64,000 nt of DNA from Sphyrna mokarran (taxonomy: Eukaryota), in contig JAGIQG010000009.1 in assembly GCA_024679065.1 (NCBI GenBank), forward strand, positions 96,720,001 to 96,784,000, given 5' to 3'. Positions 23,536-47,624 of this stretch are shown here, in pieces. The translations under genes and the position numbers were made by a program. The notes below the pieces were generated by a model. That model worked only from the letters and a program-made list of their open reading frames with translations, was not told the origin of the DNA and made no database searches. How positions within the stretch are numbered: position 1 is the stretch's first letter; each line of letters opens with the position of its first letter.

Positions 23536-25384
23536 TTCAAGTGGAAATTTTACTAAAATGAAATGAGTCCAGAGATAAAAATAGTTGATACTACCTTACG
23601 TGATCCGAAGCTTGGGCACTACCAAACTGCAGATTGGAGGGGTGGATAAGATTTGGGGTGTGGCAGGAAGATTATAGGCAGGGACTAGTGGAGCAATTTT
23701 GTTTTGGGAACTGATTTTTGTTAAGGAAATTCTGATGTTGAGAAGTCCACCATGAAACCACAAGTGGAGAAGTCCAGGAAAGCAGCATTTCACTTCACCA
23801 AGAAGCAGCAGACATTCACTCCCATATCCCTTCCCCAAAGGGTTAGTAGTCACACCAGTTTAAAAAAAAATCACATAAGCTGCAGTGACAAAATAAAAGG
23901 TATTTATAAAGTATTCACAGGTAAGCACCAATGCCTTAAGTCTGAGGGAATTCATTAAATCAGATATCTGGTGCTTGAGGAAAGGAACGATATCCGCAAG
24001 AGATCAACACAAAATGGGACAAGACTGATAACTTGTAACAGTGGTGAATTAAGTCAGCTCACATAATTGCATATATTTAGCAAGTGTGAGCCTATTGTGA
24101 TTGCTTTCAATATTTGTACCATATGCATGATGTAACCGTAATCAATAACTGTGTGTGGATAGAGATAACTCCTGTACCTTGATTGATGTATGCTATTTAA
24201 TTGTAACCAAATTTAAAAATATGGCTGCTTGTGTATTCCAGAATTCTGGACAATGGCTGGTTACCAACACTGACCTGTGGTTTTCCAGAGACCACACTAT
24301 ACAGCTTGATGAAAATAGCTATATAAGAGAAATCCATGATTTGGTCTGGTTACCCAGAGAGGAAAGTTGCAACCAATGACATCAAAATCCATAACAACCT
24401 TTGCCCCTCCTTCCCACCAATCCCACTTTTCTAAGTCCAAATAAACAAGAGCAAGATTTAGTGGCCTTCGAGTGTGCATAAGGTTGCTGCTCTTGTTAGC
24501 CGGTTAAAACCACACACAAACACATTGATAGAATCACAGAATTCCTATTTTACAGAGGATGCCATTCAGCCCATCAAGTCTGCAATGACCACAATTCCAC
24601 CAGGCCCTACACTCATAACCTACTTATTTACCTGACTAACCCCCTGATACAAAAGGGTAACTTAGCGCAGCTAATCCACCTAACCTGCACATCTCAGGTA
24701 AATATTGAGAAGTTCCTTGCTGGATATCTAAGCAGAATCACCTTGTGTCTTGCAAAGAGGGTAGGGGATGGGGTGCAGAGATTCTTCAGCACAGTACAAT
24801 AGAGGCCCAACTCACAGTGTTCTTGTTATTTGAATTAACGCTTTCAACCTACTATATTTCAATGCACAACTAGCTCTCCTTAAGCTTCTTACCTCTCTTT
24901 AAATTAATCCAGGTCTTCCCCTTTCGCAAAAAGTCCATCACCGATGTCTCTTCCCCCTTCAGTTGTAGATCTTCATCTCAGATTTTCATTCTGTTCATGA
25001 TATCTCAAAATATATCAATACCTACAACTTCATTGAACTCTCTAATCATCCCAATTTACATCACTATTTCAGCCTGGGTTATACGAATCAAACTATCCTG
25101 TTTAAAGACATCCATAATATCCCATGAGATTATAGTTATCATGTGATACTTCATTATCTGCAATAATGAACCAAAGGTAGGCAGGGATCATCCATTGTCT
25201 CGAAGCTGTGATCTACTCATGTGTAGAACAGTTCTGCTTTGTTATAACCCAAGTATATAGTAATGATACAGATCCTTTAATATATTTTTCTCCCACTTCC
25301 CTGCCATGGAGGAAAAATGACCATATTTGGCTAGTTTCTTATTCTTAATTTATTCTGAAGGCATGGTGATGCCCTTCATCTACA

Positions 25385-25925
25385 TAACCATAGAAATGTA
25401 GGAAGTAGAAGCAGGAGTAGGCCATTTGACTCTTTGAGCCTGCTTCGCAATTTATTTTGATCATGGCTGATCATCAAATTCAATATCCTAATCCTCCTTT
25501 TCCACCATGTCCCTTGATCCCTTTACCCCTATGTAGTCACACAATGTTTTGGCTTCAACTACTTTCTGTGCTAGTGAATTAAATACATTCACCACTCTCT
25601 GGGTGAAGACATTTTCTGTCCTTCATCCTCAAACTATAACCCCTAGTTTGGACTCCTCCACCATTGCAAATCTTCCTTCCGAATTTACACTGTGTAATTC
25701 CATTAGAATTTTATGAGCTTCTATAAGATCCCCTCTCACTCTTCTAAACTCCAGTGAATATAATCCTAACCAACTTAGTGTCTCCTCATATGACAGACTT
25801 GCCATCCCAGGAATCAGCCTGGTAAACCTTTACTATACTCCCTCTCTAGCAAGAACATCTGGTAAGGATGTCAAAAATGCACACAATATTCCAGGTGTGG
25901 CCTCATCAATGCCTCATGCAATTTC
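25385..25925 (-). mobile_element. CR1 3' fragment
   Basis: Nucleotide similarity to 9360-9905. Confidence 0.7.
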
Positions 25926-26102
25926 AACTGTAACATCAGATATGGTGGACATTCTGCCAAGAGCCAGTCTTAAAGACAACATCATCCCATGTTGTTTCTG
26001 ATTTCCTATTGGGCATCAGGTTCTGAATTCTTTGGAACACTTGGACTCAGCATCAACAGCTTTGAAGCTGGACGGGTCAACCTTCACCTGGACTTGAGTG
26101 TT

Positions 26103-26159
26103 TCAGAGTCTATCGCTCCATCTTGGTTGTTTTTTTCTCCACAGTCTCCGTGTGGGCAA
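26103..26159 (-). CDS. Gene A terminal coding exon (LPTRRLWRKKQPRWSDRL*)
   Basis: ctcatttgtttgtgcAG acceptor, phase 0, stop TGA at 26105-26103. Confidence 0.6.
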   Translation of the reverse strand: MPTRRLWRKKQPRWSDRL

Positions 26160-27055
26160 CTGCACAAACAAATGAGATGTCATGTTAAGGAGCATTAGTG
26201 AGACCGCTTCACACTACATTCAGGTGGAATATTTTTGATAATGTTGATCCCAGAAGTTTAAAGTCACTGTGAGGCAGCATGGCAGCACAGTGGTTAGCAC
26301 TGCTGCCTCAAAGCGCTTGGGATCCAAGTTCAATTCTGGCCTCGGTCATGGTGTGTGGGGAGTTTGCACATTCTCCTCTTTTCTGCATAGCTTTCCTCTG
26401 GGTTCTCCAATTTTTTCCCAATGGTCCAAACATGACCTCAGGTTAGGTTGTTTGACCATGTTAAATTGCCCTTTAGTGTTGGAGGGGTTAGCAGGGTAAA
26501 TACATGAGGATAGAGCTTGGGTGGGATTGTTGTCCTGGGCTTGATGGGCTGAATGGCCTCCTTCTGCATTGTAGGAATTTTATGATTTGATTTATTTATG
26601 TCAAGTAGATTTATATTAATACTGCAATAAAGTTACTATGGCAATCCACTAATCTCCACACTCCAGCACCTGTTTGGGTATACTGAGGGACAATTTAGAA
26701 TGGTCAATGCACCTAATCAGCATTTTTTTTTGGACCTGAATTCATAGGTCTGAAGGGAAGGAACCCCAATCTACGATATAGCTGACAGAGAATGGAGCTT
26801 TCTCAAGCACCCACCCAATTCCCCAGTCAATAGATACAGATTGTGGCACTCCCTGTTTAGCTGTAAAGTCAAGGCTTCACTCGGGAACATCTTACTGCAA
26901 TCCCCCATTCCCATCCGCCTCCTCCCCCCTCCCCCAAAGCATTAACATCTCACACATACAATAATCTAACCATTTGAAATCTGTGAGATTGTCTTGTGTT
27001 AACATCCCACTATGCAACATTAAATCAAACATATTAAAACCGCTGTGCTACAAAC

Positions 27056-27096
27056 CTTATTCAATGCCCCAACTGAAGAACAAATCTTTTGAATAT
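27056..27096 (-). CDS. Gene A cytoplasmic exon 1 (DIQKICSSVGALNK)
   Basis: tttgcAG acceptor, AAG|GTTTGT donor, 41 nt phase 1-0, in frame with the TM exon. Confidence 0.65.
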
Positions 27097-28303
27097 CTGC
27101 AAATATAATTAATGAAATGTTATTAAATAAGGTAAATATTGTTGCTTTATAGCTATGTAGTGCTTGTCTTTGACTTGAGGCCATGGAGCCAATAAGGAAA
27201 ATAGTCAAAAAGTACAATCACTTTCACCCTTGTATTCCAAAACTCTCTGTATTCCACAAAATCACATGACTTGTAAAGTGAAACGCCTTATATATTTAAG
27301 TAGCGTTCAACAATTCCCTACTTTGCACCGAAAAGCAGAAATTCGCCTTGGGTACATCACGTGAAAAAATCCTGGAAAATCTCAGCAGCTCTGACAGCAT
27401 CTGTGGAGAGAGAACACAGCTATTGTTTCTAGTCCAGTGACACTTCATCTGCTGTGACAAAGAGTCATCCAGACTCAAAACATTGGCTCTATTCTCTCCT
27501 CATAGGTGCTGTCAGAGCTCCTGAGATTTTCCAACGTTAGCTGTTGTTGTTTCACATTCCAGCGTCTGCAGTATTTTGCTTTTGCCCTGATGATTTCAGG
27601 TCATTTCTCTGTTACGTCAGGCAGCTGATCCCTCGAATACAATGCCTTTAATGAACAGCCAATCTAAAGCCACTCACTCTGCATCACCCTCCAATAATCT
27701 CTGCCCCTAACATTCTCAATGTGACTCAGACAGATTGCAATGTGCATGATGGAAGAGTTACACAGAAACAACAGCCTTCTTTCAAGGGACCAACTGGAAT
27801 CCATCATTCATATTGAATGATGTGGAGATGTCAATGTTGGATTGGGGTGGGCACAGTAAGAATTCTCACAACCCCCACATTCAAGACCAACAAGTTTATT
27901 TGGAATCCTGAGCTTTCAGAACCTCGGCTCCATCATCAGGAAAATTGAGAGGTAGGTTTTACAAATGCAGCATACATGTGCAAAGATGCAATTGCAACAT
28001 AACTGATAGAGAAGAATATAGACAGCTTCATTTACTGGTGGGGCAGTTCCATGCTGAAATGTCACCTGAATTATGTTTGAAGAGTTAGTCTAAAAGATTT
28101 TTTTTTATCTTATTGTAAATGTCAATCCACTTATTTTTATGGACATAATTTCTTCTCTGTCTTAGTGATGAAGGAATATCGGACAATACGCTGATATACT
28201 ACCCAATGCGCAACGGTCTGCTCCATTTTCGCAAAATTCAAAGAAAATGTTAGCAAATTCTAAACATTGATATATTTACTGCAAAGATATTAAATAATCT
28301 CAC

Positions 28304-28390
28304 CCCTCATTCTCCAGAAGGAAATAGCAATGATCACTGTCATAATGACCAGTCCTCTGACAATAAGCTGAACTGTAATTATCATTGAAC
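28304..28390 (-). CDS. ncr3: Gene A transmembrane exon (SMIITVQLIVRGLVIMTVIIAISFWRMR) with intramembrane Arg
   Basis: Acceptor tttttgttttgttctccattAG, donor G|GTGAGA, 87 nt phase 1-1; hydrophobic run containing Arg, as in NKp30 (LLLRAG). Confidence 0.85.
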
Positions 28391-29227
28391 CTAATGGAGA
28401 ACAAAACAAAAATTGGTTATCTTATCACCCCTCGTGTTTATCTCTCATTGTTTATGCTATTTTTGATTCACGGGATGTAGGCATCATTGGCTGGGCCATT
28501 ATTGTCCATCCCCAGTTGCCTTTTCCGAGGGCATTTCAGGGTCAACCACGTTGATGTGGGTTTGGAGTCACATGTTGGGCAGGATGGCAGATCCTGGTGA
28601 ACCAGATGACTCTTTCCAACAAGGGACAGATTCCAGATTTTCAGGAACAGTGGTGAGTCGAATGGTCGTCCCCAGTGTGTTAGACTGGTGCAGGGATAAT
28701 ACCATCCCACCCACTGCCTCATCTAACACAAAATGGGCAATAATCAATTAGCACATGGAAAGTAGGCAGCCAAGTCAACACACTTGACATATGAAAATGG
28801 TTGGGATTATATCCACATTAAAAACAACAGGCTGTATTATTTGGCAGCAAGCTTCATATTCCTTTCAATCTTTGGTATTTTCTGCCCACTGGGCTAAATT
28901 AAATGGACCTGAATTACATAATTGAGATAAGCAATCACTTCCATGTTGGCCACTTTTAAACACTGGTCAATAGATGGTGTTTTTCAAGCTCAACCAATGT
29001 CACATGTTAGGGTGACCTTTCAAAAGTCAGTGCAGATTCAATAAGCGAAACGGCTTCTTCTGCACTGCAGGCGTTCTATCAGTTCGATGCTTCTAACATC
29101 TTTGGAATATACGGGTTCGCTTTAATTGGATCTATACTAGTTGCCTCAACAAATTCATATGTAAACGAGATCTACAATCTGAATAAAGTGTTTTCGATTG
29201 GTGAATGGTTTATATTTCTGGCCTTAC

Positions 29228-29302
29228 GGCTTTGAGCTTTAACAACAGCAGAATACTCTGTTCTACATCTGCCATAATTAAAGACCATTCCCCGACCTTC
29301 TG
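29228..29302 (-). CDS. Gene A candidate stalk exon (TEGRGMVFNYGRCRTEYSAVVKAQS), one Cys
   Basis: Pyrimidine tract plus NAGNAG acceptor, donor C|GTAAGG, 75 nt open in phase 1-1, lies between the last V exon and the TM exon. Confidence 0.45.
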
Positions 29303-29359
29303 CTTTCGAGAGAAAACCAGACAGAGCTGCAGATCAGTTATTTTTTTTTGTTTAAGTAT

Positions 29360-29960
29360 TAAAGTTTTAAAATTTGTTTACTACTGTCATAGGTAAGCTT
29401 ACATTAACACTGCAATGAAGTTATTGTGAAAATCCCCTAGTCGTCACGGTCTGGCGCCTGTTCGGGTATGCTGAGGGAAAATTTAGCATGGCCAATCCAC
29501 CTAAGCAACATACCTTTTGAACCATGGGGGGAAAATCAGAGCATCTAGAGGAAACCCATACAGGCACGGGGAGAACGTACAAACTCCCCACAGACAGTGA
29601 CCCCAGCCAGGAATTGAACTTGGATCCCTGGCATTGTGAGATAGCAGTGCACAGTGATGCTGCCTCACAGCTCTATGGACAATGGATTCGATTCCCGGAT
29701 TGGATCACTGACTGTGTGGGGTCTGCACATTAGCCCCATGTTTACAAGGGTTTCCGTTGGGTGCTCCGGTTTACTCCCACAGTCCAAAGATTTGTGGGTT
29801 TGGTTCATTGGCCATGATAAATAGCCCATTAGTGTCCCATTGATTAGAGGGATTCACAGGGTAAATATGTGGGGTTATGAAGATAGGGCCTGGGTGGAAT
29901 TGTTCTTGGTGCAGATTCAATGAGCTGAATGGCCTCCTTCTGCACTGTAGGGTTTCAATG
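29360..29960. mobile_element. Head-to-head HE1 SINE pair in a gene A intron
   Basis: Minus copy 29360-29650 abuts plus copy 29650-29960. Confidence 0.75.
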
Positions 29961-30614
29961 CTTCCTATTGTTCTTTTAGCTATGTCCTGGGTGTCACTGG
30001 CTAGATCAGTATTTATTTTCCTTAGCCCTCTTCTATACTGAATCATTTCTATATTCCTATGGATTCAATTCCAATTTGAGTTGCTTTTTTCAGTCCAAGT
30101 CCTAATTAGCCTTGAGAAAGTGGTGGTGAGCCACCTTCTTCTACCTCTGCAGTGCCCCTGGTGTAGGTACAGCCACAATGCTGTTAGAGAGGAGATTCTA
30201 GGATTTTGACCCAGCAACAGTAAAGGAACGGTCTATATATTCCCAACTCAGGATGGTGTGTGTATTGGAGGGGAATCTTCAACGGGTGGTGGTGTTCCTC
30301 TGCACCTATTGTCCTGTTTTGAAAGGGGTTAGAGGTCGAAGTGTGGAAGGTAGTGCCTGAGGAGCCTTGGTGAGTTGCTGCATTGCATCTTGTAGATGGT
30401 ACGCATGACTGCCACTGTGTGTAGGTGGTGGAGGCGTGAATGTTTGTGGATGGGGTGCCAGTCAAGCAAGGCTGCTTTGTCCTGGGTGGTTTTGAGCTTC
30501 TTGATTGAATGGCATTCATCCAATCAAGTGAAGTGTATAAATAGTATAAGAGATGATGAGATCTATGAGGAAAAGTCCTGAAGAAGAATTGGACAGGCTC
30601 AAACTAATGGATAA

Positions 30615-30850
30615 AAGCAAAATAATGCGGATGCTGGAATCTGAAGCCAGAAGAAAAAATGCTGGAAAATCTCAGCAGATCTGGCAGCATCTGCGAGGAG
30701 AGAAAAGAGCTGACGTTTTGAGTCCAGATGACCCTTTATCAAAGCTCGAAACTAACCCCTTTTTTTCTCCAGGTGCTACCAAACCTGCAGAAATTTGCAG
30801 ACATTTTCAGATTACATTTCAGATTCTCGCTACCTGCCATATTTTGCTTT
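30615..30850. repeat. Palindromic Penelope-derived short repeat (copies ~1040-1130, 19700-19880, 27365-27585, 42560-42685, 45575-45770, 49785-49975)
   Basis: aaatgctggaaaatctcagcag.tctggcagcatctg … cagatgctgccagacctgctgagattttccagcattt inverted arms. Confidence 0.6.
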
Positions 30851-31456
30851 TACGCTCAAAGTTATCTTGCTTGTGTTGCACCTCATCAAGTCAAATTTAA
30901 TCCCAGTCAGTATCCCAGTTATTTGTATGATTATATTCCCTCTTCAATGGGGCTAAGATGTAAATTCACAATTGGAATATACCACATTGACATCAATTTG
31001 GATGGGATTCAGTCGGAGATGAAATCAGTTCATTATAGGGTCTGATCATCCAACCATTAGTCACATTTAAAAGAAGGATTCTTTCTTAGAGTTACATATC
31101 CAATGAGCAGAGTGGATGGGGTTAACTCTTAATCCATCCTCGCACTTGCTCTGAAAAGCAACTCAAATTCAAATTGAATGCATAAAACAATGGTAGAGTG
31201 CAGAAAGGGATATTTCAGTTCATTCCATCCTCACCTATCCAAAGACACCCTGGTGCGCTTTCTGACCCCATCCTCCTGCACACAGTCCATAACCCTGCAG
31301 CTTTCAACACTTAAGGTGCAGATCCAATTCATGGTCCTAACAAAAGAGGCATAGAAGATTCAAGCCAACAAGAGCAGGCATTGTATTTCATCTCAGTTTT
31401 GATCCTGCTCCTGATCTTCACCAAAATCTTAACACACATAAAAATGAATCACTTAC

Positions 31457-31798
31457 TTCTCACAATGAGAAGGGTTCCACCACCATATTCCACACCCAGT
31501 AGCATCATCACCACTTCACAGTAATACATCCCGGAATCCTTCAGTCTTACATCCTTGATGAGAATGGAGGCATCTCTGGCACTTCCAAAATGCTCACTGG
31601 CTCTGTAGATCCGCCCTCTGTATGAAGCTGTCCCGTTGGAAACTTCAGTTCCATTCCTTGTGTCTCTGTACCAGCTATAAGAGCCTATCGCCTTGGAGAT
31701 GTTGGCTGTGTAGTCACAGGGCAGGAGCACTGTCTGCCCTTCCTCAGCCAGAATAGTGGGCAGCTTTTGTTCAACTGCAAACATCTCAGCTTCAATTC
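31457..31798 (-). CDS. ncr3: Gene A IgV exon (4th, membrane-proximal)
   Basis: 342-bp phase 1-1 exon, donor A|GTAAGT; EVSNGT..YRGR..IKDVRLKDSGMYYC..YGGGTLLIV; most NKp30-like and most divergent of the four. Confidence 0.93.
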
Positions 31799-33406
31799 CT
31801 GCAAACGAGAAAAGTTCAGGTTATTTGCTTTGAGGTTGTGGCTTTGACAGTCAGTCCAGTGAGTAAATATCTCAATCCATAATTATACAATCATAGTCAA
31901 TGAACTTTGGAAAAAGTGAAAGGCGTTGTGAGCAACTAAACATTGCAGCATTTTTTTAAATTCTGTCATGGCCAATGTCGTTCTTGCTGGCCGGGCCAGA
32001 GTTTTCTGCCCATCACTAATTGCCATAAGGAAGGTGATGGTGACTTGCCTTTTTGAACCTCTGCAGTCAATTAGGTGGACGTACAACTGCAGTGCTGTCC
32101 GGGAGCTAGTTCTGGGATTTTGCCCTAAGCAACTATAAAAGAACAGTGATATCTTTCCGTTCAGGGTGGTGGGTGACTGACAGGGAAACATCAGGAGGTG
32201 GTGTTCCCACATCTCTGCCGCCCTTGCCCTTCTAGATGTTGGAACAGAAGTATGAGTTTGCAAGAAGCTTTAGTGAGTTGCTGCAGTGTATCTGGTAGAT
32301 GGTACACATGGCTGGCAAGGTACATTAATGGTGGTGAATAGATGTTGAAGATGATGGATGGGGTGCCAATTAAGTGGGTTGCTTTGTCCTGGATGGTAGA
32401 GTTGCTTGAGCCTTGTTGGAACTACACTCATTCATGTAAGTGGAGAGTATCAAAGGTTTTACTGGTGATAAAACTATCTTCTTGTTTTGAATCATCAGCA
32501 ACTCAGATTTACTAGACAGATCTTGATTATTTTAAATGATTAAAATTTCTCATCACTGGAGTTGAGAATTAGGAACATAGGAAATAGAAGCAGAAATAGG
32601 CCATTTGGCCCTTCAAGCCCGTTCTGCCGATTCTTATTTTTTATTCAGTTGTGGGACAGGGACATTGCTGGCCGGTCAGCATTGATTGGCCATCCCTAGT
32701 TGCCCGGGAACTGAATGGCTTGCTCACCATTTCAAAGGGCAGTTGACAGTCAATCACATTGCTGGGCCTCTGGAATCACATGTAGGCCAGACCGAGTAAG
32801 GACAAGAGATTTCCTCCTCTGAATTAGTGGATGGGTTTTTCCGATAATCAACAATAGTTTGATGGTCATCGGTATTCCAGATTTTTTTATTGATTTCAAA
32901 TTCCACCAGCTGCCATGGTGGGATTTGAACCCGTGGCCCCAGAATATTAGCTGAGTTTCTGGATTAATATTCAAGCAGTAATACAACCATCAACTCCCAA
33001 CACATTTCATGATCATGACTGATCATCAAATTCAACATCTGATTCCACCTTCACCATATATCCCTTGATCCCTCTAGCCCCAAGAACTATATTTATATTT
33101 CTTCTTGAAACTGGCTTCAATTATTTTCGAATTTCACAATCTGGATTTACTGCATCAAAGCCACTAGAGTGATAGCCTCATGGAACATTAGAATACAGCA
33201 AGAGGCCCTTCGGCCCAGTGTGTTGTGCTGGCCATCAAGAGCCCATTGATTTTAATCCAATTTTCCTGCAGTTACTATCTAGTCAAGTATGCTTTGACTT
33301 TACAACTGCTCATCTAAATGCTTCTGGCCAAGGTTCAGTCAGAGATAAGGCCACAGCTCTAAAGGTTTGAATGTCCCAGATCAATGCATGCAGTCGAATA
33401 GCATAC

Positions 33407-33748
33407 TTTTCACAATGAGATGTGTTCTTGCACCATATTTCACACCCAGTTGCAATATCACCACTTCACAGTAATACACTCCGGAATCCTTCACTGTCAC
33501 ATCCTTGATGAGGATAGAGGCATTGCCAGCATTCCCAAAATCCTCACTGATCCTGTAGATCCTCCCTCCGTATGAAGCTGTCTCATTGGAAACTTCAGTT
33601 CCATTCCTTGTGTCTCTGTACCAGCTATAAGAGCCTATCGCCTTAGACACATTGGCTGTGTAGTCACAGGGCAGGAGCACTGTCTGCCCTTCCTCAGCCA
33701 GAACAGTGGGCAGCTTTTGTACAACTGCAAACATCTCAGCTTCAATTC
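33407..33748 (-). CDS. ncr3: Gene A IgV exon (3rd)
   Basis: 342-bp phase 1-1 exon, AG/GT boundaries, intact IgV motifs; G-strand reads GART instead of GxGT. Confidence 0.92.
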
Positions 33749-35325
33749 CTGCAAACGAGAAAAGTTCAGGTTACTTGTTTTGTGGTTGTGACTTTGTCCA
33801 GTGAGAAAATATCTCAATGTTTCCTTCATTGTACAACTGGTTTCAGTGAACCATCTGGCAAACACTGCAAGGAATCGAGAACAACTGGAAACTGGACAAT
33901 TTTTTAAAAATCTTTTCATGGGCAATGGGGCATCACTGTCAATGCCTGCATTTGTTACCCATTCCTAATTGCCCTGGGACGTTTTAGAGGGCTGTGAAGT
34001 GTTAGCCCACATTGAGATAACATGCAGACCAGGCTGTATAAGAGCGTCTTTCCCCAAAATCACAGATGGGTTTATCCAACAACCCATCATAGGTTCCCAG
34101 TCACCATTACTGGGACTAGCTTCATATTTCAGATTTTATTAAAAATTGAATCCGTACCACAAAAGCTGTCATGGTGGGAATAGAAATTGGTGTCATAGAG
34201 ATTTATAGCACGGAAACAGGTCCTCTGGCCCAACTTGTCCATGCCACCTACTTTTAACCACTAAGTTTTTAACCACTAACCCAATTAAGTGGGTTGCTTT
34301 GTCCTGGATGGTCAAATTGTTTGAGTCTTGTTGGAGCTACACTCAACCACCTAACTTTAAAGTATCGAAGGTGTTACTGATGGTGAAACTATCCTCTTGT
34401 TTTGAATCCTCAGCAAATAGGTTTACTTCTAGACAGAACTTGATTATTTTAAATGATTAAAATTTCTCATCAATGGAGTTGAGAATTAGGAACGTAGAAA
34501 ATAGAAGCAGAAATAGGCCATTTGGCCATTCAAGCCCGTTCTGCCGATTCTTATTTTTATATTCATTTGTGGGACAGGGACATTGCTGGCCGCTGAGCAT
34601 TGATTGGCCATCCCTAGTTGCCCGGGAACTGAATGGCTCGCTCGGTCATTTCAAAGGGCAGTTGACAGTCAATCACATTGCTGGGCCTCTGGAATCACAT
34701 GTAGGCCAGAGCGAGTAAGGGCAGGAGATTTCCTTCCCTGAATTAGTGAATCGGCTTTTCCGCAATCAACAATGGTTTCATGGTCGTCGATATTCCAGAT
34801 ATTTTGTATTGAATTCAAATTCCACCAGCTGCAATGATGGGATTTGAACCCGTGGCCCCAGAACATTAGCTGAGTTTCTGGATTAATAGTCGAGCAATAA
34901 TACTACCATCAACTCCCAACTTATTTCATGATCATGGCTGATCATCAAATGCAGCATCTGATTCCACCTTCACCCCATATCCCTTGATCCCTTCAGCTCT
35001 AAGAGTTATATCTATATTTCTTCTTGAAATTGGCCTCAACTATTTTTGAATTTCACAATCTGGATTTACTGCATCAAAGTCATTCTGTGATAGCCTCGTG
35101 GAACATTAGAACACAGCAAGAGGCCCTTCAGCCCAGCGTATCTGTGCTGACCATCAAGAGCCCATTGATTTTAATCCAATTTTCCTGCAGTTACTTCCTA
35201 GTCAAGTATGCTTTGATTTTTCAACTGCTCATCTAAATGCTTCTGGCCAAGGTTCAGTCAGAGATAAGGCCACAGCTCTAAAAATTTGAATGTCCCATAT
35301 CAATGCATGCAGTCGAATAGCATAC

Positions 35326-35667
35326 TTTTCACAGTGAGATGTGTTCCTGCACCATATTTCACACCCAGTTGCAACATCACCACTTCACAGTAATACACTC
35401 CGGAATCCTTCACTGTCACATCTTTGATGAGGATAGAGGCATCGCCGGCATTCCCAAAATCCTCACTGATCCTGTAGATCCTCCCTCTGTATGAAGCTGT
35501 CTCATTGGAAACTTCAGTTCCATTCCTTGTGTCTCTGTACCAGCTATAAGAGCCTATCGCCTTAGACACATTGGCTGTGTAGTCACAGGGAAGGAGCACT
35601 GTCTGCCCTTCCTCAGCCAGAGCAGTGGGCAGCTTTTGTACAACTGCAAACATCTCAGCTTCAATTC
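35326..35667 (-). CDS. ncr3: Gene A IgV exon (2nd)
   Basis: 342-bp phase 1-1 exon, AG/GT boundaries, canonical Cys-Trp-Cys, DSGVYYC and GAGT motifs. Confidence 0.92.
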
Positions 35668-36555
35668 CTGCAAACGAGAAAAGTTCAGGTTACTTGTTTT
35701 GTGGTTGTGACTTTGTCCAGTGAGTAAATATCTCAATGTTTCCTTCATTGTACAACTGGTTTCAGTGAACCACCTGGCAAACACAGCAAGGAATTGAGAA
35801 CAACTGGAAACTGGACAATTTTTTAAGAAATCTTTTCATGGGCAATGGGGCATCACTATCAATGCCTGCATTTGTTACCCATCCCTAATTGCCCTGGGAT
35901 GTTTTAGAGGGCAGTGAAGGGTTAGCCACATTAACATAACCAGGCTGTATAAGAGCGTCTTTCCCCAAAATCACAGATGGGCTTAGCTAACAATCCATCA
36001 TAGGTTCCCAGTCACCATTACTGAGACTAGCTTCATATTTCAGATTTTATTAAAAATTGAATCCGTACTGCAAAAGCTGTGATGATGGGAATAGAAATTG
36101 GTGTCATAGAGATTTACAGCATGGAAACAGATCCACCATCAACTCCCAACACATTTCATGATCACGGCTGATCATCAAATTCAACATCTGATTCCACCTT
36201 CACCCTATATCTCTTGATCCCTTCAGCTCTAAGAGTTATATCTATATTTCTTCTTGAAATTGGCCTCAACTACTTTTGAATTTCACAATCTGGATTTACT
36301 GCATCAAATTCATTCTGTGGTAGCCTCATGGAACATTAGGACGCAGCAAGAGGCCCTTTGGTCCAGCGTATCTGTGCTGACCATCAAGAGCCCATTGATT
36401 TTAATCCAATTTTCCTGCAGTTACTTCCTAGCCAAGAATGCTTTGACTTTACAACTGCTCATCTAAATGCTTCTGGCCAAGGTTCAGTCAGAGATAAGGC
36501 CACAGCTCTAAAAATTTGAATGTCCCATATCAATGCATGCAGTCGAATAGCATAC

Positions 36556-36897
36556 TTTTCACGGTGAGATGTGTTCCTGCACCATATTTCACACCCAGTT
36601 GCAACATCACCACTTCACAGTAATACACTCTGGAATCCTTCACTGTCACATCTTTGATGAGGATAGAGGCATCGCCGGCATTCCCAAAATCCTCACTGAT
36701 CCTGTAGATCCTCCCTCTGTATGAAGCTGTCTCATTGGAAACTTCAGTTCCATTCCTTGTGTCTCTGTACCAGCTATAAGAGCCTATCGCCTTAGAGACA
36801 TTGGCTGTGTAGTCACAGGGCAGGAGCACTGTCTGCCCTTCCTCAGCCAGAATAGTGGGCAGCTTTTGTACAACTGCAAACATCTCAGCTTCAATTC
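36556..36897 (-). CDS. ncr3: Gene A IgV exon (1st, N-terminal), NKp30-like VJ-type domain
   Basis: Acceptor cttttctcgtttgcAG, donor A|GTATGC; LPC..AIGSYSWYRD..GTEVSNET..YRGR..IKDV..DSRVYYC..YGAGT matches the NKp30 pattern (LPC/AIGSVTWFRD/GKEVRNGT/FRGR/IRDVR/YVC/GNGT). Confidence 0.92.
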
Positions 36898-37349
36898 CTG
36901 CAAACGAGAAAAGTTCAGGTTACTTGTTTTGTGGTTGTGACTTTGTCCAGTGAGTAAATATCTCCATGTTTCCTTAATTATACAATGGGATTCAGTGTGC
37001 CACCTGGCTAACACAGCAAGGAATTAAGAACAACTGGAAACTGGACAATGTTCCTTTTAATTTTTTTTCATGGGCAATGGGACAACACTGTCAATGCCTG
37101 CATTTGTTACCCATCCCTAATTGCCCTGGGACATTTTAGAGGGCTATGAAGGGTTAGCCACATTAAGATAACATGCAGACCAGGGTGTATAAGTGCGTAT
37201 TTCCCCAAAATCACATTAGTGAGACAGATGGGTTTATCCAACAATCCATCAAATGTTCCCAATCACCATTGCTGAGACTAGCTTTATATTTCAGATTTTA
37301 TTAATTGAATCCTAGTGCAGAAGCTGTCATGGTGGGAGTAGAAATTGGT

Positions 37350-37850
37350 GTCATAGAGGTTTACAGCATAGAAACCGGTCTTCTGGTCCAACTTGTCCAT
37401 GCTGCTAGTTTTTTACCACTAAGCTAGTCCTAATTGCCCACATTTGGTCCATATCCCTCTACACCCACCTTACCCATAACTGTCTAAAGCTTCTTAAAAG
37501 ACAAAATTGTACCACATCTACTACTACTTCTGGCAGCTTATTCCAGACACTCACTACCCTCTGAGTGCAAGAGTTGCCTCTCCAGACCCTTTTGGAATTC
37601 TTCCCTCTCACCTGAAGTCTATGCCCTCTAATTTTTAGACTCCCTGAGCTTTGGGGAAAGATGATGACTATCTCCCTTATCTATGCTCTCATTTTTTAAT
37701 AGACCTCTATAAGATCACCTCAGCTCCCGAGGCTCCAGGGAAAAAAAGAATCAGTCTATCCAGCCCTTCCTTATAATGAAACCATAAGTCCGGTAACATC
37801 CTAGTAAATCTCTTCTGTGTGCTTTCTAGTTTAATAATATCCTTTCTATG
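37350..37850 (-). mobile_element. CR1 3' fragment in gene A intron 1
   Basis: Similar to 19890-20380 and 70-430. Confidence 0.75.
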
Positions 37851-38847
37851 TGCTTAGAGCATTAACCTGCGCCACTGGATAATAAATCCATCAGCACTAT
37901 GATTATTTTCAGTGACTTTTTATTTGGTTGCAAAAAATAGACTTTATTTCTAAAATATCTGAAAGAGATCATAGAATCCTTATAGTGCAGAAGGAGGCCA
38001 TTCAGCCCATTGACTGTCCAACAGAGCATCTTGCCTAGGCTCACCCTTGTCTCATTCCCTTAACCTCACTAAACTACATATATTTGGAAACTAGGGGTAT
38101 GTCTAATCCATCTAACCTATACACCTTTTCACTGTGGCACAAATCTGGAGCACCTGAAAGAGACCCACAAGACATGGGGAGAACATACAAACTCCACACA
38201 GATAATCACTCAAGGTTGGAAGTGAACCCAGCCCCTGGCACTGTCAGCCTTACTAACCACTATGGCACTGACAAACTTTTCAAAATGGCATCACAGAGAG
38301 TGCAATAATATCGAAGTTCCCTACATAGAGTAAGTTGCACGCTGAGGTGCCTCAATGTAACCTAAAGAAACATTACAAGTATTTCAAAATGGTTATTACT
38401 AGTGGTGCACTTGTATTTATGTTTTCTATATTGATTAAGTTGCTATCTGAGGTGCTTCAATACAATTCTGATACATGTAATGTTCAATTCCAGTCATACA
38501 ATCCTAAGGGATCTGTACAATTCACCTGCCTTCAGTGCACTCTGACTGAAAAATCATAGATAGTCGCCATCCCTTTTTGCATCTATATGGTGGCAGCCCC
38601 AAAGCTTTGGTGCATCTCTGGGGATACTGTTCTGGGCATGGCAAAATGCGAGTCTGCAAGACTCAGTTGGGAATAGCTCTTTGTACTGGAAAACACGTTT
38701 TGGCCAGACTAAAGGGTTTCTTTCAATGAGTAGATAATCCTGGTCGATCCATCAACATCTCCTTCTTGACAAAATATCTCAAAATGATAACTGGAAGTAT
38801 TTAGCAGATCTACGTATAAGACTGGAATAAATGAAGATTGTACTCAC

Positions 38848-38890
38848 CAGAAAGAGGAATTAGTATGCACATGATGTGGATTGGATTCAT
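38848..38890 (-). CDS. ncr3: Gene A exon 1: leader peptide MNPIHIMCILIPLS(G) of NKp30/NCR3-like receptor
   Basis: ATG at 38890, 43-nt hydrophobic leader ending G|GTGAGT (phase 1); splices in frame to the GA-ATT-GAA-GCT-GAG-ATG start of the V exons; same 43-nt length as the leaders at 43181 and 63297. Confidence 0.85.
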
Positions 38891-41800
38891 GCCTGTTACA
38901 GTAATGAGATTTGAAAACCTGGTGAAATGAAACAGCATGGTCAATAGAAAAGGAATAACATTCTAGCCATGAAGAGGAAAACCATTCAAATGTGGCCTCT
39001 GCTTGAACATACATTAACAGAGAAACATGAGATCCACTGGTTGTGAAACCATGCCTAATGGACAGAACAGACGGAAGAGAATTTAAAGTCTATCTTGAAT
39101 TACCGTCAGTCCACAAACAATAATTTTGGTCTCGCTTGTTAATTGAGGAACTAATATGCGAAAACAAGGTTTCTAAAAGTAGGACAACGTTGAACCACTT
39201 ATCCATCTGCTGTGCATGTAAACGCACAAATGGGGGTGGATTTTCACCATCAACCGTTGCTTTGCGGGGAGATTAATTTTAACTTTGGGTGAGAATGTGA
39301 AATGGACTTTGTCAATGTGACCTTTTATAACCTCCACCTGCAGTGCTATATGTTTGCAATGTCAATCCGTACCTTAACCTGAACAGCAAATCTAACCAAA
39401 TCTAATCGAATTCTTTGGGCGATGAGAGGGTATCTATTGTTCCTTCTGGAATTGTCTGGCTAAAACTGAAGGACTGACGTCCCCTAAAGACAGGAATAAA
39501 CTCAACCGCCTTCTTCGACCCGGCGATTAAAACTGGACACCTTATTCTGGATAGAGAACCAGAGTTTACCCTACATTAAATTACAAACGAAATAATATGT
39601 TGTCGATTTCACTGGATAACAGAAGTTGTAATAGAATTAAGAACTGTTCTTACTGAAAGAGTGGTGTTCATTGCGGAATGTTTTTGCACACTTGCAGTTG
39701 GGTGCTGGCGGGCAGGGGTTGGAGGAGGTGTTATTTGTATGTTAAGGTATGAAGTCTGGTTACTTATCAGGGGAAGTGTTTCAAATGGCGTTGACTTTTC
39801 AATATGTAATTGTGACTTTTCAGAAAGTAACTCACACAGGCCTGTAGTTAAGAATGCTGGTGCGATACTTAAGACGGGATACGGCAAGAATTTGGCACTT
39901 TATCAGCGACAGATCAGTGTTCTTGCTCCTTAACTGAACGGTTCTGCGTGAGACTGGATGGAATTGGTGACGTGCTTGTCTGGGATCACTCCTGCAACGG
40001 AATGAATTGAACATTCCCAATATTCGCAAAGCCCGGTTTAGTTGCGAATCAAACCCGGGTGCCTGGCACTGTGAGACAATATTGTTAACTGCTGTGCCAC
40101 CGTACGACCTGGACCCAGCAACTGGAGTCGCACCAAGTCCAGTTGAGTCTGCAAAGTTCTCCATAGTAGCAGCTATCCAAATTTGAGAGAATTCTCCCAT
40201 GGATTAATGAAGCAAAGACCTAAGAGTCAGGCACAGTGAATAATTCGGAAAAGAAAATGTTCCAAGCTCTCAAACACAATTTCTGTTCATGTCCCAGAGA
40301 TAACCTCATGGTCTTACTCTGCCAGAACTGTGATACCTTGCCTGTTCCCATCAAGCAGATATCGATTAGTTGGCTCAATGTTCCCCGTCTTTCTGCTTTC
40401 GTTTTTCTTCAGGGATCTGCCCACCGTTTTATTTTCTCTTGAATTATTTTTTAAGCTTTAAAACACACTGATGCTCCAGGTGCGCAGCCGCAGGCTCCAG
40501 CAGCAACGCCACATTCATTTGCAAACTAAATTTATAAATGTTTCAGGGACGTGCAACACAGTGTGGCTTCAGTGACACCGACTCCGGCTATCTATCTTCG
40601 GGACATCCGATACGTGACACCTACCGCTAAAACCATCCTGCCAATTAAACAGGAAATCTACATGTCCTTGCTCACGAAGACGGGTTTTTTTTTGCAGTAG
40701 TTCGCTTTATTTTAGTTAACTATTACTTTCAGCCGTTAGCTGAAGGAATTTGCAAGCTGAGTAATTACCAGTTATTTCAACGTCTGAAGCTTGTGCATAG
40801 TCTACATCTTTTGCCCATGTCTCCATGTGTTTTCTCCCTGTGCTCCGGTTTCCTCTGAAGAGGTGCTGATTAGATACATTGACCCGAACAGGCGCCGGAA
40901 TGTGCCGATTCGGGGAATTACACACTAACTTCATTGCAGTGTAAGTAAGTAAGCCTTACTTGTGACTACTGAATATACTTTTTAACTTTTAAGACAACCA
41001 TTGCGGAGAGTAGCCTTTATTCACATTTTCATTAATCAATTTCACCAAAAATTCGTTGCGGTTGTAATAGAAACATTGGGTGATTAGTTCTGCTGCCTCA
41101 GAGCGCCAGGGACACATGTTCGATTCTCGGCTTGGGTCACTGTATGTACATTCTCCCCGTGTCTATGTGGGTTTCCGCTGGATTCTCCAGTTTTCTCCCA
41201 CCTCAGTCCGAAAGACATGCTGGTTAGATGAATTGGTCTTGCTAAATTTTCACTCAGTGTACATGAACGGATGCAGGAATGTGGCTACCAGGAGATTTTC
41301 ACAATACCTTGTAGTGTTAATGTAATCCTACTTGTGACACTAATAGATAAACTTAAACATCAAAACTAGGAGCAGGGGTAAGCCATTTGGCCTTCCTAGC
41401 CTCTTCCACAATTTTGTGCTAATATGGCCGATATTAACACCATATTGCTGCTCTCTTTCCCTACTCCTTGACGCCCTTTGAATTTAGAAATCTATCCATT
41501 CCCTTGTAAACTATCTTAAATGAATTGGGTTACACAGATATCTACGGAAGAGAATTTATGTTCACACTCTCTAAGGGAAGAAGTTTCTCTTCATCTCAAT
41601 CTGAAGTGGACCACCCCATATCCTAAGATTGTGGTCCTTGTCTCGATCCCACACCAAACAGAGAAACCGACCACTGCTACCAGTCTGCCCAGAACTGTCT
41701 GAATTTTATCTTTCTCAATCTATGTTATGCCCTTCTCCAGTAATTAGAGCATTGGCCTGGGCTTCTACACTACCAGACTTGTCACATCATCATTTGGCAG

Positions 41801-43180: not shown

Positions 43181-43223
43181 ATGTGGTCCAGCCTTGAGCT
43201 TTGTATTCTGATTCTTCTCTTGA
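43181..43223 (+). CDS. ncr3: Gene B exon 1: leader MWSSLELCILILLL(T)
   Basis: gctagcATG start, hydrophobic, 43 nt, donor A|GTAAGT, in frame with the V exon at 48572 (…LLLTASA|EKVTV signal cleavage). Confidence 0.88.
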
Positions 43224-43669
43224 GTAAGTACCTACCTTAATTCACAGACCAGGGTATGAGTGGCAGATTCCCTTCGCTCAGACAGTCAATGATAATTTGG
43301 CAGTCACCATTGCTGAGATTAGTTTTCAATTCCTGATTTGATTTGAATCCATGTGGCCACACATTAGCCTGCTGCTCTGGATTACTCGAATAATGGCACG
43401 ACCACTTCACCTCTGTCTCCCCAAATTAGTGTACTAATCTTGTGCAATGATAGACAGCCAGTTGATTTTCTCCAGAAAGTTAAGTACTATACTTTTTATT
43501 ATCAATATTGGTGATCTGTAAACATCCATTATCCATCCCTAATTGTCCTTCAGAAGGTGGCAGTGAGGTGCCTCCTTGAACTGTTACAGTCTGTGTGGTG
43601 TAACCAGGCCATACCAGATTAAATACTGGATTAAATGCCACGGCATGCGATTTGACAGAAACATAGCCT

Positions 43670-44480
43670 TTTGATTTGATTTATTATTGTCATTTGAAAA
43701 GTGACAATACAATGAAACGTATTGTTTCTTGTGCATTATACGGGCAAAACATACCGTTCATATGGAAGGGAATGAGAGAGTGCAGAATGTAGTGTTACAG
43801 TCATAGCTATCGTACAGAGAAAGAACAACTTAATGCAAGGTAGGTCCATTCAAAAGTCTAATGGTAGCAGGAAAGAAGCTGTTCTTGAGTTGGTTGGTAC
43901 ATGACCTCAAATTTTCTTTTCCATCTTCTTCCCAACAGAAGAAGGCGGAAGACAGAATGTCCACAGTGTGTGGAATCCTTAGTTATGCTGGCTGCTTTGC
44001 CGAGATAGCAGGAAGCGTAGACAGAGTCAGTGATGGGAAGCTGGTTTGTGTAATGGATTGGACTACATTTACAACATCTTGTAGATTCTTCTGATCTTGG
44101 AGAGAGCAGGAGTCATACCAATCTGTGAAATGCCAGAAAGAATAATTTCAATGGTGCATCTGTAAACGTTGGTGAGAGTCCTAGCTGACATTTCAAATTT
44201 CCTTATTCTTCTGAGAAATTTGAGGCATTGGTACCTTTCTTAGCGTTTGGTATAGTGTTGGCATGAGGGGAAAAGGACAGGTTGTTGAGATCTGGAGACC
44301 TAAAACCCTGATGTTCTGGATCATTTCTACTTCATCCACATTGATGTAGACAGGGGCATGTTCTCCATTACGCTTCCTGAAGTGGAGGACAATTTCCAAT
44401 TGTTAATATTTAAGGAGAGATTATTATTGTCACTCCAATTCACCAGATTCTCTATCTTATTACTGTGTTCTGTCAACAAC
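43670..44480 (-). mobile_element. Rex1/Babar-type LINE 3' fragment
   Basis: EIVLHFRKR..HAPVYIN.DEVEMIQNIRVLGLQI resembles Rex/Babar KELIVDFRK..LYING..VE.V..FKFLG; shorter copy at 1240-1600. Confidence 0.7.
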
Positions 44481-44655
44481 ACTCGTGATCATGTTAAGCT
44501 TATTTGATGCACTGAAGCACATTGTGCTGGATCCATGGAAATAATAATGCCTTGCTAATCTTTGGCAATTATGTAAATGGCAAGGTCGGGCCATTCATTT
44601 AACACACTGCTTTTTTGTTTGCTTTCCTCCATTTAAATGGAAATCAAAATACCGG

Positions 44656-45100
44656 GTGTTGCCTGGTATGGAGGGCAGGTCTTATGAAGAGAGGCTGAGG
44701 GATTTGAGGTTGTTTTCGTTAGAAAGAAGGCGACTAAGAGGAGACCTTATTGAAACATATAAGATGATTAGAGGTTTAGATAGGGTGGACAGTGATAGCC
44801 TTTTTCCTAGGATGGAGAAAGCTTTCACGAGGGGACATAGCTTTAAAATAAGGGGTGGTAGTTATAGGATGGATGTCAGAGATAGGTTCTTTACCCAGAG
44901 GGTGGTAAGTGTATGGAATGCCCTGCCTGCTGCAGTTGTAGATGCGCCACATTTGGTGGCGTTTAAGAGGTTAGTAGATAAGTTTATGGATGAAAAGGGA
45001 ATGGTTTAGGTTAGAGGGTCATTGCTTTTTGTTAATTGGTCTGCGCAACATTGAAAGCCGAAGGGCCTGTTCTGCGCTGTAATGTTCTATGTTCTATGTT
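44656..45100 (+). mobile_element. CR1 3' fragment, near-identical to 15838-16270
   Basis: ORF LPGMEGRSYEERLRDLRLFSLERRR; GTTCTAT tail. Confidence 0.9.
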
Positions 45101-47212: not shown

Positions 47213-47624
47213 ACAATGGTTAGCATTGCTGTCTCACAGTGCCAGAGACCTAGGTTCAATTCCAGGCTCGGGTCACTGTCTGTGTGAAACTTTCACGTTC
47301 TCCCTGTGTCTGCGTGGATTTTCCCTGGATGCTCTGGTTTCTTCCCATAGTCCAAAAGTAGGTTGGTTGGCCATGCTAAGTTGCCCCTTGAGTTAAGGGA
47401 GTTAGTAGTGTAAAACTGTGGGATTACAGGAATGGGACCTGGGTGGGATTATGGTTGGTACAGACTCGACGGGCCGAAAGGCCTCTTTCTGTCATATCTA
47501 TGATATGATTCCATGAAATCAGCTTAGTTGCTTGAATCCTCCAACCTCAGCAAAATAATCATGAATTTCCCTTTACTTCAAAAAGTAAAATTCTAAATGA
47601 AATTTCCTGTTCTGCTATTCTAAC

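What the first reader, a model, noticed from the sequence alone, without database searches (positions are those of the whole stretch)
26103..38890. Four-domain NKp30/NCR3-like receptor gene: one leader, four tandem phase-1 IgV exons, Arg-TM
Seen in the sequence: a single 43-nt leader (38890-38848), four 342-bp VJ-type IgV exons with intact AG/GT ends, then an Arg-containing TM exon and two tail exons. I found no leader or TM exon between the V exons. Established: mammalian NKp30 (NCR3) has one IgV and pairs with CD3zeta/FcRgamma through a TM Arg. Inference: this is a multivalent, ~556-aa activating NK-type receptor. Because every V exon is phase 1-1, any subset can be spliced in frame (up to 15 non-empty combinations), so it could also act as a splice-diversified receptor cassette rather than four separate genes.
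Basis: partly seen in the sequence, partly recalled or inferred. Interest (0 to 1): 0.85.

Follow-up and report, generated by a model that had tools for sequence, protein, structure and literature searches.

The report
Shark NKp30-like gene, four V exons
This is a shark immune-receptor gene of the NKp30 family whose binding-domain exon has been copied to four in a row behind a single start exon, a layout also seen in predicted genes of other sharks and rays, though whether all four copies reach the protein is untested.

Summary
On the minus strand there is one 43-nt leader, four 342-nt phase 1-1 V-set exons with AG/GT ends, one TM exon with an Arg, and no second leader or TM between them. The V domains are NKp30-like. 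Human NCR3 is the best solved match by sequence (E 4e-15) and by fold.

The array is real duplication, not an assembly artefact, because unit flanks differ by 5-13%. V4 is the older copy (dS about 0.21). V1-V3 are recent (dS 0.04-0.05).

It is not unique. RefSeq models in other sharks, rays and frogs carry 2-5 tandem NKp30-like V domains. The closest relative, great white shark LOC121291272, is modelled with 2 V plus the same Arg-TM, and the basking-shark one with 1 V.

A four-domain protein is plausible but unshown. No RNA run was listed. The V1-V3 donors (GTATGC) are weak and unrelated to V4's flank.

The "splice-diversified" reading is weak: V1-V3 are 95-98% identical in protein, so the combinations mainly change the number of domains.

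By exon arithmetic the full model is 531 aa, not about 556.

The parts
38848..38890 (-). Leader exon, 43 nt, ends in phase 1. It reads MNPIHIMCILIPLS and has the donor CTG|GTGAGT.
   Evidence: Read. Of the 5 phase-1 leader candidates in 39500-25800, it is the only one upstream of the V exons and outside a repeat. No second copy was found.
36556..36897 (-). V exon 1, 342 nt, phase 1-1. It carries Arg in place of the usual small residue in the D-x-G-x-Y-x-C motif (DSRVYYC).
   Evidence: (V-set E 1.2e-15).
35326..35667 (-). V exon 2, 342 nt, phase 1-1. All canonical V and J-like motifs are intact.
   Evidence: V-set E 2.2e-16; best solved match is human NCR3, E 4.4e-15. AF2 pLDDT 92.7; the top 4 Foldseek hits are NKp30.
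33407..33748 (-). V exon 3, 342 nt, phase 1-1. The J-like G-x-G motif reads G-A-R.
   Evidence: (V-set E 7e-16).
31457..31798 (-). V exon 4, 342 nt, phase 1-1. It is the older, more divergent copy and the only one with a consensus-like donor (GAA|GTAAGT).
   Evidence: V-set E 3.1e-14; dS about 0.21 against V1-V3.
28304..28390 (-). Transmembrane exon, 87 nt, phase 1-1, with an Arg in the hydrophobic stretch (IVRGLVIMTVIIAISFWRMR).
   Evidence: Read. Hydrophobicity scan. Over 20 residues it is 65% identical to the TM of Carcharodon LOC121291272 and 70% identical to that of Cetorhinus LOC144695539, with the Arg kept in both.
27056..27096 (-). Predicted tail exon 1, 41 nt, phase 1 to 0, with a weak donor (AAG|GTTTGT). 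Unverified.
   Evidence: Read. Donor score 1.49 (recalled matrix). No counterpart is visible in the lamniform models.
26103..26159 (-). Predicted last coding exon, 18 codons plus TGA. Similarity to the lamniform tail continues past the stop.
   Evidence: Read. The tblastn match to the Cetorhinus tail has E 1.3 and is not significant.
32366..37375 (-). Three tandem duplication units carrying V1, V2 and V3: about 37375-36135, 36134-34281 and 34223-32366. The unit edges lie in transposon-tail sequence. Units 2 and 3 hold an extra segment of about 620-690 bp that unit 1 lacks.
   Evidence: Self-BLAST (92.6%, 92.4% and 90.6% identity). Spacings of 1230, 1919 and 1950. Divergence profile.

Best explanation
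This is a cartilaginous-fish member of the NKp30/NCR3 receptor family of the activating type: a charged Arg in the TM and a short tail without tyrosine. Its single V exon has been multiplied within the gene.

An older duplication gave V4 and the ancestor of V1-V3. Two recent unequal exchanges between transposon tails then gave V1, V2 and V3.

Transcription starts at the one leader. All four V exons share the same acceptor, are 342 nt long and are in phase 1-1, so ordinary splicing can string them in series. The result would be an ectodomain of more than one NKp30-like V domain, up to four, on one Arg-TM anchor that recruits an ITAM adaptor.

V4, which has the strong donor, is probably always included. 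V1-V3, which have weak GTATGC donors, probably behave as cassette exons, so products with 1 to 4 V domains may coexist.

Shown here: the gene anatomy, the family identity, the duplication history, and constraint over the older split.

Inferred: which exons are spliced in, the adaptor pairing, and the ligand.
For: Anatomy.

Family identity:
- NCR3 is the best solved match by sequence, E 4.4e-15 against 7.8e-9 for the next kind of protein.
- NCR3 is also the best match by fold: ranks 1-4, TM-score 0.80-0.83.

Real duplication: unit flanks differ by 4.8-13% and show indels, while the exons differ by 1.8-3.2%. Fisher P is 3e-7 to 1e-4.

Older split under constraint:
- V4 against V2 has 21 non-synonymous and 15 synonymous changes, dN/dS 0.39, binomial P 0.011.
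- Of the 16 fixed residue differences, 8 arose on the V4 branch, 5 on the V1-V3 stem and 3 are ambiguous. The V1-V3 lineage therefore did not drift like a dead exon. P is 0.002 against a neutral stem paired with a V4 held at a dN/dS of 0.2.

Multi-V relatives:
- Of 31 relatives examined, 17 have 2 or more V stretches.
- Among them is the closest relative, Carcharodon LOC121291272, with 2 V plus the Arg-TM. Its V-V junction has the same form...TVR-R-IDAEKF.
- In the tree, a first-V type and a second-V type are each shared by three ray species (support 100/100). A membrane-proximal V type is shared by Heterodontus and Scyliorhinus (98/95). Tandem V domains have therefore been kept over long times.
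- Carcharodon LOC121291130 isoforms X2 and X4 differ by exactly 114 aa, which is one V exon.

Same window: the neighbouring plus-strand gene also has one leader, two 339-nt V exons and one TM.
Against: - There is no transcript evidence of any kind.
- The V1-V3 donors score 0.62 bits against 4.28 for V4 and 6.54 for the leader. That matrix is recalled, approximate vertebrate frequencies.
- Downstream of the exon, V1-V3 and V4 share no detectable similarity: score 14 against a shuffled maximum of 15.
- V1 and V3 each carry an Arg at a canonical small-residue position.
- Among V1-V3, purifying selection is not detectable: 9 nucleotides in residue-changing codons against 4 synonymous, P 0.36.
- Their low exon divergence could be gene conversion rather than selection. 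Exon dS of 0.04-0.05 is about the same as the first 100 nt of the intron.
- The basking-shark relative is modelled with one V.
- Public multi-V models are automated predictions. At least one, Scyliorhinus LOC119975537, looks like two complete V-TM units merged.
Confidence: 0.6

Rival explanations
1. The gene makes a single-V receptor. Only V4, or only one V exon, reaches the mature mRNA. V1-V3 are recent duplicate exons that are skipped, or that end transcripts by read-through, where the frame stops 8 codons past the donor. They have not yet decayed.
For: - V4 alone has a consensus-like donor, and the V1-V3 donors are weak.
- V1-V3's downstream flank is unrelated to V4's.
- V1 has DSRVYYC and V3 has G-A-R in the J-like motif.
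- No significant constraint is seen among V1-V3 (P 0.36).
- At 2-3% divergence an open 342-nt frame is expected by chance.
- The basking-shark relative has 1 V.
- Mammalian NKp30 has one V (PMC6514059 passages).
Against: - The V1-V3 stem did not evolve faster than V4: 5 against 8 fixed changes.
- All four acceptors are identical.
- Multi-V models are frequent in the family, and some V-type pairings are conserved across species.
- The great white relative is modelled with 2 V.
Confidence: 0.28
2. The array is a regulated, splice-diversified cassette. Cells choose among up to 15 V-exon combinations to diversify recognition.
For: - All four exons are phase 1-1 and 342 nt, so any subset stays in frame.
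- One paralogue in great white shark has predicted isoforms with and without one V exon.
Against: - V1-V3 are 95-98% identical in protein. They differ at 8 of 113 codons in residue, so the combinations change the number of domains far more than the specificity.
- Nothing seen would enforce a choice: the exons are multiples of 3 nt, the introns are 888-1608 nt, and the acceptors are identical.
- I made no search for competing RNA pairings, so their absence is not shown.
Confidence: 0.09
3. The tandem copies are an assembly artefact, that is, a falsely expanded repeat.
For: None from the calls. It cannot be excluded directly because no reads could be laid.
Against: - The units differ by 4.8-13% in their flanks, by indels, and by a segment of about 620-690 bp present in units 2 and 3 only. 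False expansions are near-identical.
- A second multi-V gene lies in the same window.
Confidence: 0.03

Closest known systems
Human NKp30 (NCR3), solved structures 3NOI, 3PV6, 6YJP and 9FWW
   Same: - Single-exon V domain with a J-like G-x-G-T-x-L-x-V end.
- Best solved match by sequence (E 4.4e-15) and by fold (36-38% identity, TM-score 0.80-0.83).
- Arg in the TM and a short tail without a signalling motif (PMC6514059 passages).
   Different: - Human NKp30 has one Ig domain. This gene has four V exons.
- Ligand and adaptor are untested here.
- Orthology with mammalian NCR3, as opposed to family membership, is not shown.
Carcharodon carcharias LOC121291272 (XP model, 388 aa) and Cetorhinus maximus LOC144695539 (XP_078422539, 213 aa)
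   Same: - These are the closest proteins found, 70-75% identical over the V domain.
- They form the sister clade of the four window V domains, with support 100/98.
- They have the same Arg-TM motif, IVRG...FWR.R.
- The great white model joins two V domains through the same kind of junction codon.
   Different: - They have 2 V and 1 V against 4 V exons here.
- The V copies group by species, so the duplications, or their homogenisation, happened separately in each lineage.
- The lamniform stalk is 9 residues longer, and their tail runs on where this gene has a stop.
- Their loci could not be fetched.
Multi-V NKp30-like gene models in other elasmobranchs and in frogs: Heterodontus francisci XP_067865773 (3 V), Mobula hypostoma XP_062903898 (5 V), Hemitrygon akajei (3 V), Scyliorhinus canicula LOC119975535 (2 V), Xenopus tropicalis NCR3 entries (2 V), Bombina bombina (3 V)
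   Same: Tandem NKp30-like V domains sit behind one leader and are joined head to tail with short linkers.
   Different: - Most of them have an uncharged TM and a long tail with tyrosine motifs, which is an inhibitory look.
- In several, the V domains of one protein are old and divergent (44-72% identical). Here three of the four are near-identical.
- They are named 'turtle homolog', 'polymeric immunoglobulin receptor-like' or 'uncharacterized', not NCR3.
Nurse shark NCR3 family (Kinlein et al. 2021, Immunogenetics 73:333; entries QTT61898 and QTT61904)
   Same: It is the same family in a shark. The two entries seen match V2 at E 2.2e-16 and 3.7e-15.
   Different: - The two entries seen have one V each.
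- The paper itself is not held, so I cannot say whether it reports multi-V forms. What I know of its content is recalled.
Polymeric immunoglobulin receptor and other multi-V-domain receptors
   Same: They have a chain of V-type domains on one TM anchor. Automated pipelines give some of the relatives this name.
   Different: pIgR matches far more weakly (E about 1e-6). Its domains are not of the VJ type and the family is different.

Membership tests
NKp30 / NCR3 family | V-set Ig domain encoded with its J-like segment in one exon (G-x-G-T-x-L-x-V end) | tested here: met
   All four exons are Pfam V-set. The J-like motif is intact in V1, V2 and V4. V3 reads G-A-R-T-H-L-I-V.
NKp30 / NCR3 family | Closest to NKp30 among proteins of known structure, by sequence and by fold | tested here: met
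   phmmer: the four NCR3 chains come first at E 4.4e-15 to 6.1e-15, and the next kind (IgNAR V) is at 7.8e-9. Foldseek on an AF2 model of pLDDT 92.7: ranks 1-4 are NKp30.
NKp30 / NCR3 family | Groups with proteins annotated as NCR3 in cartilaginous fish and other vertebrates | tested here: inconclusive
   Nurse shark, elephant shark, lungfish and frog proteins named NCR3 are among the hits and sit in the tree. The tree has no outgroup and only 114 columns, so it cannot show that the family is one clade or that this gene is the orthologue of mammalian NCR3.
NKp30 / NCR3 family | Arg in the TM and a short tail without a signalling motif (adaptor-dependent activating form) | tested here: met
   The TM exon reads IVRGLVIM..., and the Arg is kept in both closest relatives. 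The predicted tail has no tyrosine but is unverified. Adaptor binding is not testable here.
NKp30 / NCR3 family | One extracellular Ig domain (the mammalian architecture) | tested here: not met
   Four V exons lie between one leader and one TM. How many are in the protein is unknown.
NKp30 / NCR3 family | Linkage to the MHC (class III region) | not tested
Open frames of 95 aa or more in the window are V exons or repeat-derived. No MHC marker gene was seen.
NKp30 / NCR3 family | Binds B7-H6 or a B7-H6-like ligand | not testable with these tools
   No test was possible.
Mutually exclusive or combinatorial exon-cassette arrays (Dscam-type) | A mechanism that enforces or regulates exon choice: competing RNA pairings, steric limits, or frame-based decay | tested here: not met
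   The exons are 342 nt, a multiple of 3, so there is no frame penalty. The introns are 888, 1577 and 1608 nt, so there is no steric limit (coordinates). RNA pairings were not searched.

The most novel reading that the evidence does not exclude
Copy number of the V exon acts as a fast-evolving dial on an activating NK-type receptor. Unequal exchange between transposon tails adds or removes whole NKp30-like V domains, and weak donors make the new copies optional. One gene would then yield receptors with one to four near-identical binding domains. Their different reach and avidity for a B7-H6-like ligand would arise independently in each shark lineage.
Probability: 0.3. Interest if true: 0.6.

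Novelty: new member of a known kind. Interest (0 to 1): 0.4.

Why it matters
NKp30 is treated as the one NK receptor conserved from sharks to humans, and it is described as a single-V molecule. This locus, together with the public gene models found here, shows that in sharks, rays and frogs the family often carries several V domains in tandem.

In this gene the V domains are gained at the level of single exons, in an activating member of the family. If transcripts confirm multi-V products, the gene offers a simple natural system for asking how domain number affects ligand binding and signalling in an ancient receptor-ligand pair.

If only one V is used, the locus is a snapshot of exon birth and death and nothing more.

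Tried and rejected
RNA evidence. The look-up of sequencing runs on 31400-37000 listed no run. Its cap is one call, so read laying could not be used at all.

I could not count V exons or compare donors in the great white and basking shark genes.

Protein search with one V exon. The search for homologous proteins found no candidate in its length range of 62-198 aa. Relatives appeared only with the search that has no length limit and with longer database proteins as queries. No protein of the window's own genome was returned.

Literature.
- Seven searches found no open paper describing NKp30-like genes with several V domains in cartilaginous fish.
- The three most relevant papers are not held: Flajnik 2012, Kinlein 2021, and Ohta and Flajnik 2015. 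I therefore make no claim that such genes are not in print.
- Of PMC10751288, PMC12227049, PMC10450919, PMC12619710, PMC3964593 and PMC6514059 I saw only the passages returned by find.
- Supplements were not opened.

Rejected readings.
- Four separate genes: rejected because there is no second leader or TM.
- Assembly artefact: rejected on the divergence between units.
- tRNA genes and short tandem repeats in 25000-40000: none found.
- The tblastn extension of the lamniform stalk into the intron after V4 runs through a stop. I took it as chance.

Tree.
- Of the 31 proteins, I left out P0160 and P0087.
- I also left out any matched stretch shorter than 80 residues, which removed the partial second V of Stegostoma P0009.
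- The root is at the midpoint only.
- The sample of relatives is biased towards multi-domain proteins, because summed scores rank them higher.

Donor scores. These use base frequencies recalled from memory and are only a rough ranking.

Joined model. I built, translated and searched no joined model, and the 531-aa figure is a sum of exon lengths.

Full report
WHAT IS THERE

- A 43-nt leader at 38890-38848, with an ATG, a hydrophobic core and the donor CTG|GTGAGT.
- Four exons of exactly 342 nt: 36897-36556, 35667-35326, 33748-33407 and 31798-31457. Each is open in phase 1-1 and preceded by the same acceptor, TCTCGTTTGCAG.
- An 87-nt exon at 28390-28304 that encodes a hydrophobic stretch with an Arg.

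Two further small exons (27096-27056 and 26159-26103) keep the frame and end at a TGA, but they are predictions only. Summing the exon lengths gives 531 codons before the stop, not about 556. I did not build or search the joined model; each exon was searched on its own.

ONE LEADER, ONE ANCHOR

- A scan of 39500-25800 for phase-1 ATG-to-GT exons with a hydrophobic core gave 5 candidates.
- A scan of 38848-25800 for 19-residue hydrophobic windows gave 5. None lies between V1 and V4, and two are the TM exon.
- Local alignment of the leader and of the TM exon against the introns and the rest of the window never clearly beat shuffled controls.

The four V exons therefore cannot be four complete genes.

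FAMILY

- All four exons are Pfam V-set, E 2e-16 to 3e-14.
- Among solved structures, V2 matches human NCR3 (NKp30) best: four NCR3 chains at E 4.4e-15 to 6.1e-15. The next kind, shark IgNAR V, is at 7.8e-9.
- An AlphaFold model of V2 (pLDDT 92.7, from a 15-row alignment) finds NKp30 at Foldseek ranks 1-4, with TM-score 0.80-0.83 and 36-38% identity, ahead of SIRP-alpha.
- Human NKp30 has one IgV domain and a TM Arg that pairs with CD3-zeta or FcR-gamma (passages of PMC6514059).

The gene is a member of the NKp30-like family. Orthology with mammalian NCR3 is not shown.

DUPLICATION HISTORY

Self-comparison shows three tandem units carrying V1, V2 and V3, at 92.6%, 92.4% and 90.6% identity. Their edges lie in transposon-tail sequence, and units 2 and 3 share an extra segment that unit 1 lacks.

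V4 is alike only over the exon and its upstream flank. BLAST aligns about 45-95 nt of that flank, and a more sensitive local alignment aligns about 225 nt (score 79 against a shuffled maximum of 16). Downstream of the donor there is no similarity (score 14 against 15).

The unit flanks differ by 4.8-13%, against 1.8-3.2% in the exons (Fisher P 3e-7 to 1e-4). That degree of difference rules out a falsely expanded assembly.

It does not by itself prove selection. Synonymous divergence among V1-V3 (0.04-0.05) is about the same as in the first 100 nt of the intron, so local gene conversion is an equal explanation.

SELECTION

- Among V1-V3, 9 variable nucleotides lie in residue-changing codons and 4 are synonymous. 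This is not different from neutral (P 0.36).
- Between V4 and V2 there are 21 non-synonymous and 15 synonymous changes: dN/dS 0.39, dS 0.22, P 0.011.
- With the lamniform proteins as outgroup, of the 16 fixed residue differences 8 arose on the V4 branch, 5 on the V1-V3 stem and 3 are ambiguous. A stem drifting neutrally beside a constrained V4 is unlikely (P 0.002).

Two V-exon lineages were thus both kept in working order while sharing one leader and one anchor.

Against this, V1 has an Arg in the D-x-G-x-Y-x-C motif and V3 has one in the J-like G-x-G motif. The basking-shark protein has a Glu at that same J position, so the position is not strictly fixed.

RELATIVES

A search of 1.84 billion representative proteins with V2 gave 1030 hits at E up to 0.001. 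The best are shark and ray models (names).

- Heterodontus francisci XP_067865773: 3 V.
- Mobula hypostoma XP_062903898: 5 V.
- Scyliorhinus canicula LOC119975535: 2 V.
- Cetorhinus maximus LOC144695539: 1 V plus an Arg-TM.
- Carcharodon carcharias LOC121291272: 2 V plus an Arg-TM. It has the same IVRG motif and a V-to-V junction of the same form as predicted here.

Of the 31 relatives whose domains I counted, 17 have two or more V stretches. That sample favours multi-domain proteins. At least one model, Scyliorhinus LOC119975537, looks like two whole V-TM units merged.

In a tree of 60 V domains (114 columns, midpoint root, two proteins and short stretches left out):

- The four window V domains form one clade (99/92), sister to the lamniform Arg-TM genes (100/98).
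- The two great white V domains pair with each other. Copies therefore arose, or were homogenised, separately in each lineage.
- In rays, a first-V type and a second-V type are each shared by three species (100/100).
- A membrane-proximal V type is shared by Heterodontus and Scyliorhinus (98/95).

This is hard to explain unless tandem V domains are really part of the proteins.

Great white LOC121291130 isoforms X2 and X4 differ by exactly 114 residues, one V exon. Exon skipping is thus at least modelled in the family.

In this same window the plus-strand neighbour has one leader (43181-43223), two 339-nt V exons (48572-48910 and 50581-50919) and one TM with a Lys. This agrees with an earlier first-reader note.

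HOW IT MOST LIKELY WORKS

Nothing in the anatomy forces a choice between the V exons. They are multiples of three, the introns are 888-1608 nt, and the acceptors are identical. By default, splicing should join the exons in series.

The weak point is the donor of V1-V3, AAA|GTATGC. On a recalled, approximate matrix it scores 0.62 bits, against 4.28 for V4 and 6.54 for the leader.

I therefore expect V4 to be constitutive and V1-V3 to be included only in part, giving products with one to four V domains on an Arg-TM anchor that needs an ITAM adaptor. This is inference.

Because V1-V3 are 95-98% identical in protein, the combinations would change the number of domains and the reach of the ectodomain far more than what is recognised.

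WHAT COULD NOT BE DONE

- No sequencing run was listed for the stretch, so no reads were laid.
- The key shark NCR3 papers are not held.
- Seven literature searches found no open description of multi-V NKp30 in cartilaginous fish, which is not proof that none exists.

VERDICT

The family assignment and the activating-type anchor are supported.

The four-domain protein is plausible but unshown. I put about 0.6 on more than one V reaching the protein in at least some transcripts, and about 0.3 on four V being the main form.

The layout is a further member of a kind already present in public annotation, made notable by its very recent exon triplication in an activating member of the family.

Noticed in passing
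window 43181-52950, + strand: A second NKp30-like gene lies head to head with this one. It has one 43-nt leader (43181-43223), two 339-nt phase 1-1 V exons (48572-48910 and 50581-50919) with identical GTAAGC donors, and a TM near 52870 with a Lys. Its V domains pair with each other in the tree (100/99) and belong to a different clade from this gene's, one that includes nurse shark NCR3 QTT61898.
   Followed up: partly
window 45665-46531, + strand, and neighbouring open frames (44548-45006, 46620-47129, 15617-16186): A reverse-transcriptase open frame (Pfam RVT_1, E 1.5e-35) lies inside the long first intron of the plus-strand gene. Related repeat-derived open frames sharing the motif LFSLERRRLRGDLIE are scattered through the window. 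The same repeat's tail forms the edges of the V1-V3 duplication units.
   Followed up: partly
window 26009-26147, - strand: Weak similarity to the tail of the basking-shark relative continues past this gene's TGA and then shifts frame. The tail here may have been shortened by a stop relative to the lamniform genes. The match is not significant (E 1.3).
   Followed up: partly
window 31457-31798 against 35326-35667: The differences between V4 and V2 are uneven: 10 in the first 171 nt and 26 in the last 171 nt. The roughly 50 nt before the acceptor are almost identical. Either the 5' half was homogenised by gene conversion or the N-terminal half is under stronger constraint.
   Followed up: partly
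protein P0155 (Carcharodon LOC121291130 isoform X2), residues about 122-135: The junction between the first and second V carries a repeated 7-residue stretch (GTELTVR twice). It may be a small genomic duplication or an alternative donor in the model.
   Followed up: no
protein P0019 (Scyliorhinus LOC119975537) and protein P0013 (Leptodactylus fuscus NCR3): These public models contain a TM-like stretch between V domains. They probably merge neighbouring genes, a reminder that not every multi-V model is a real protein.
   Followed up: no
   Followed up: no
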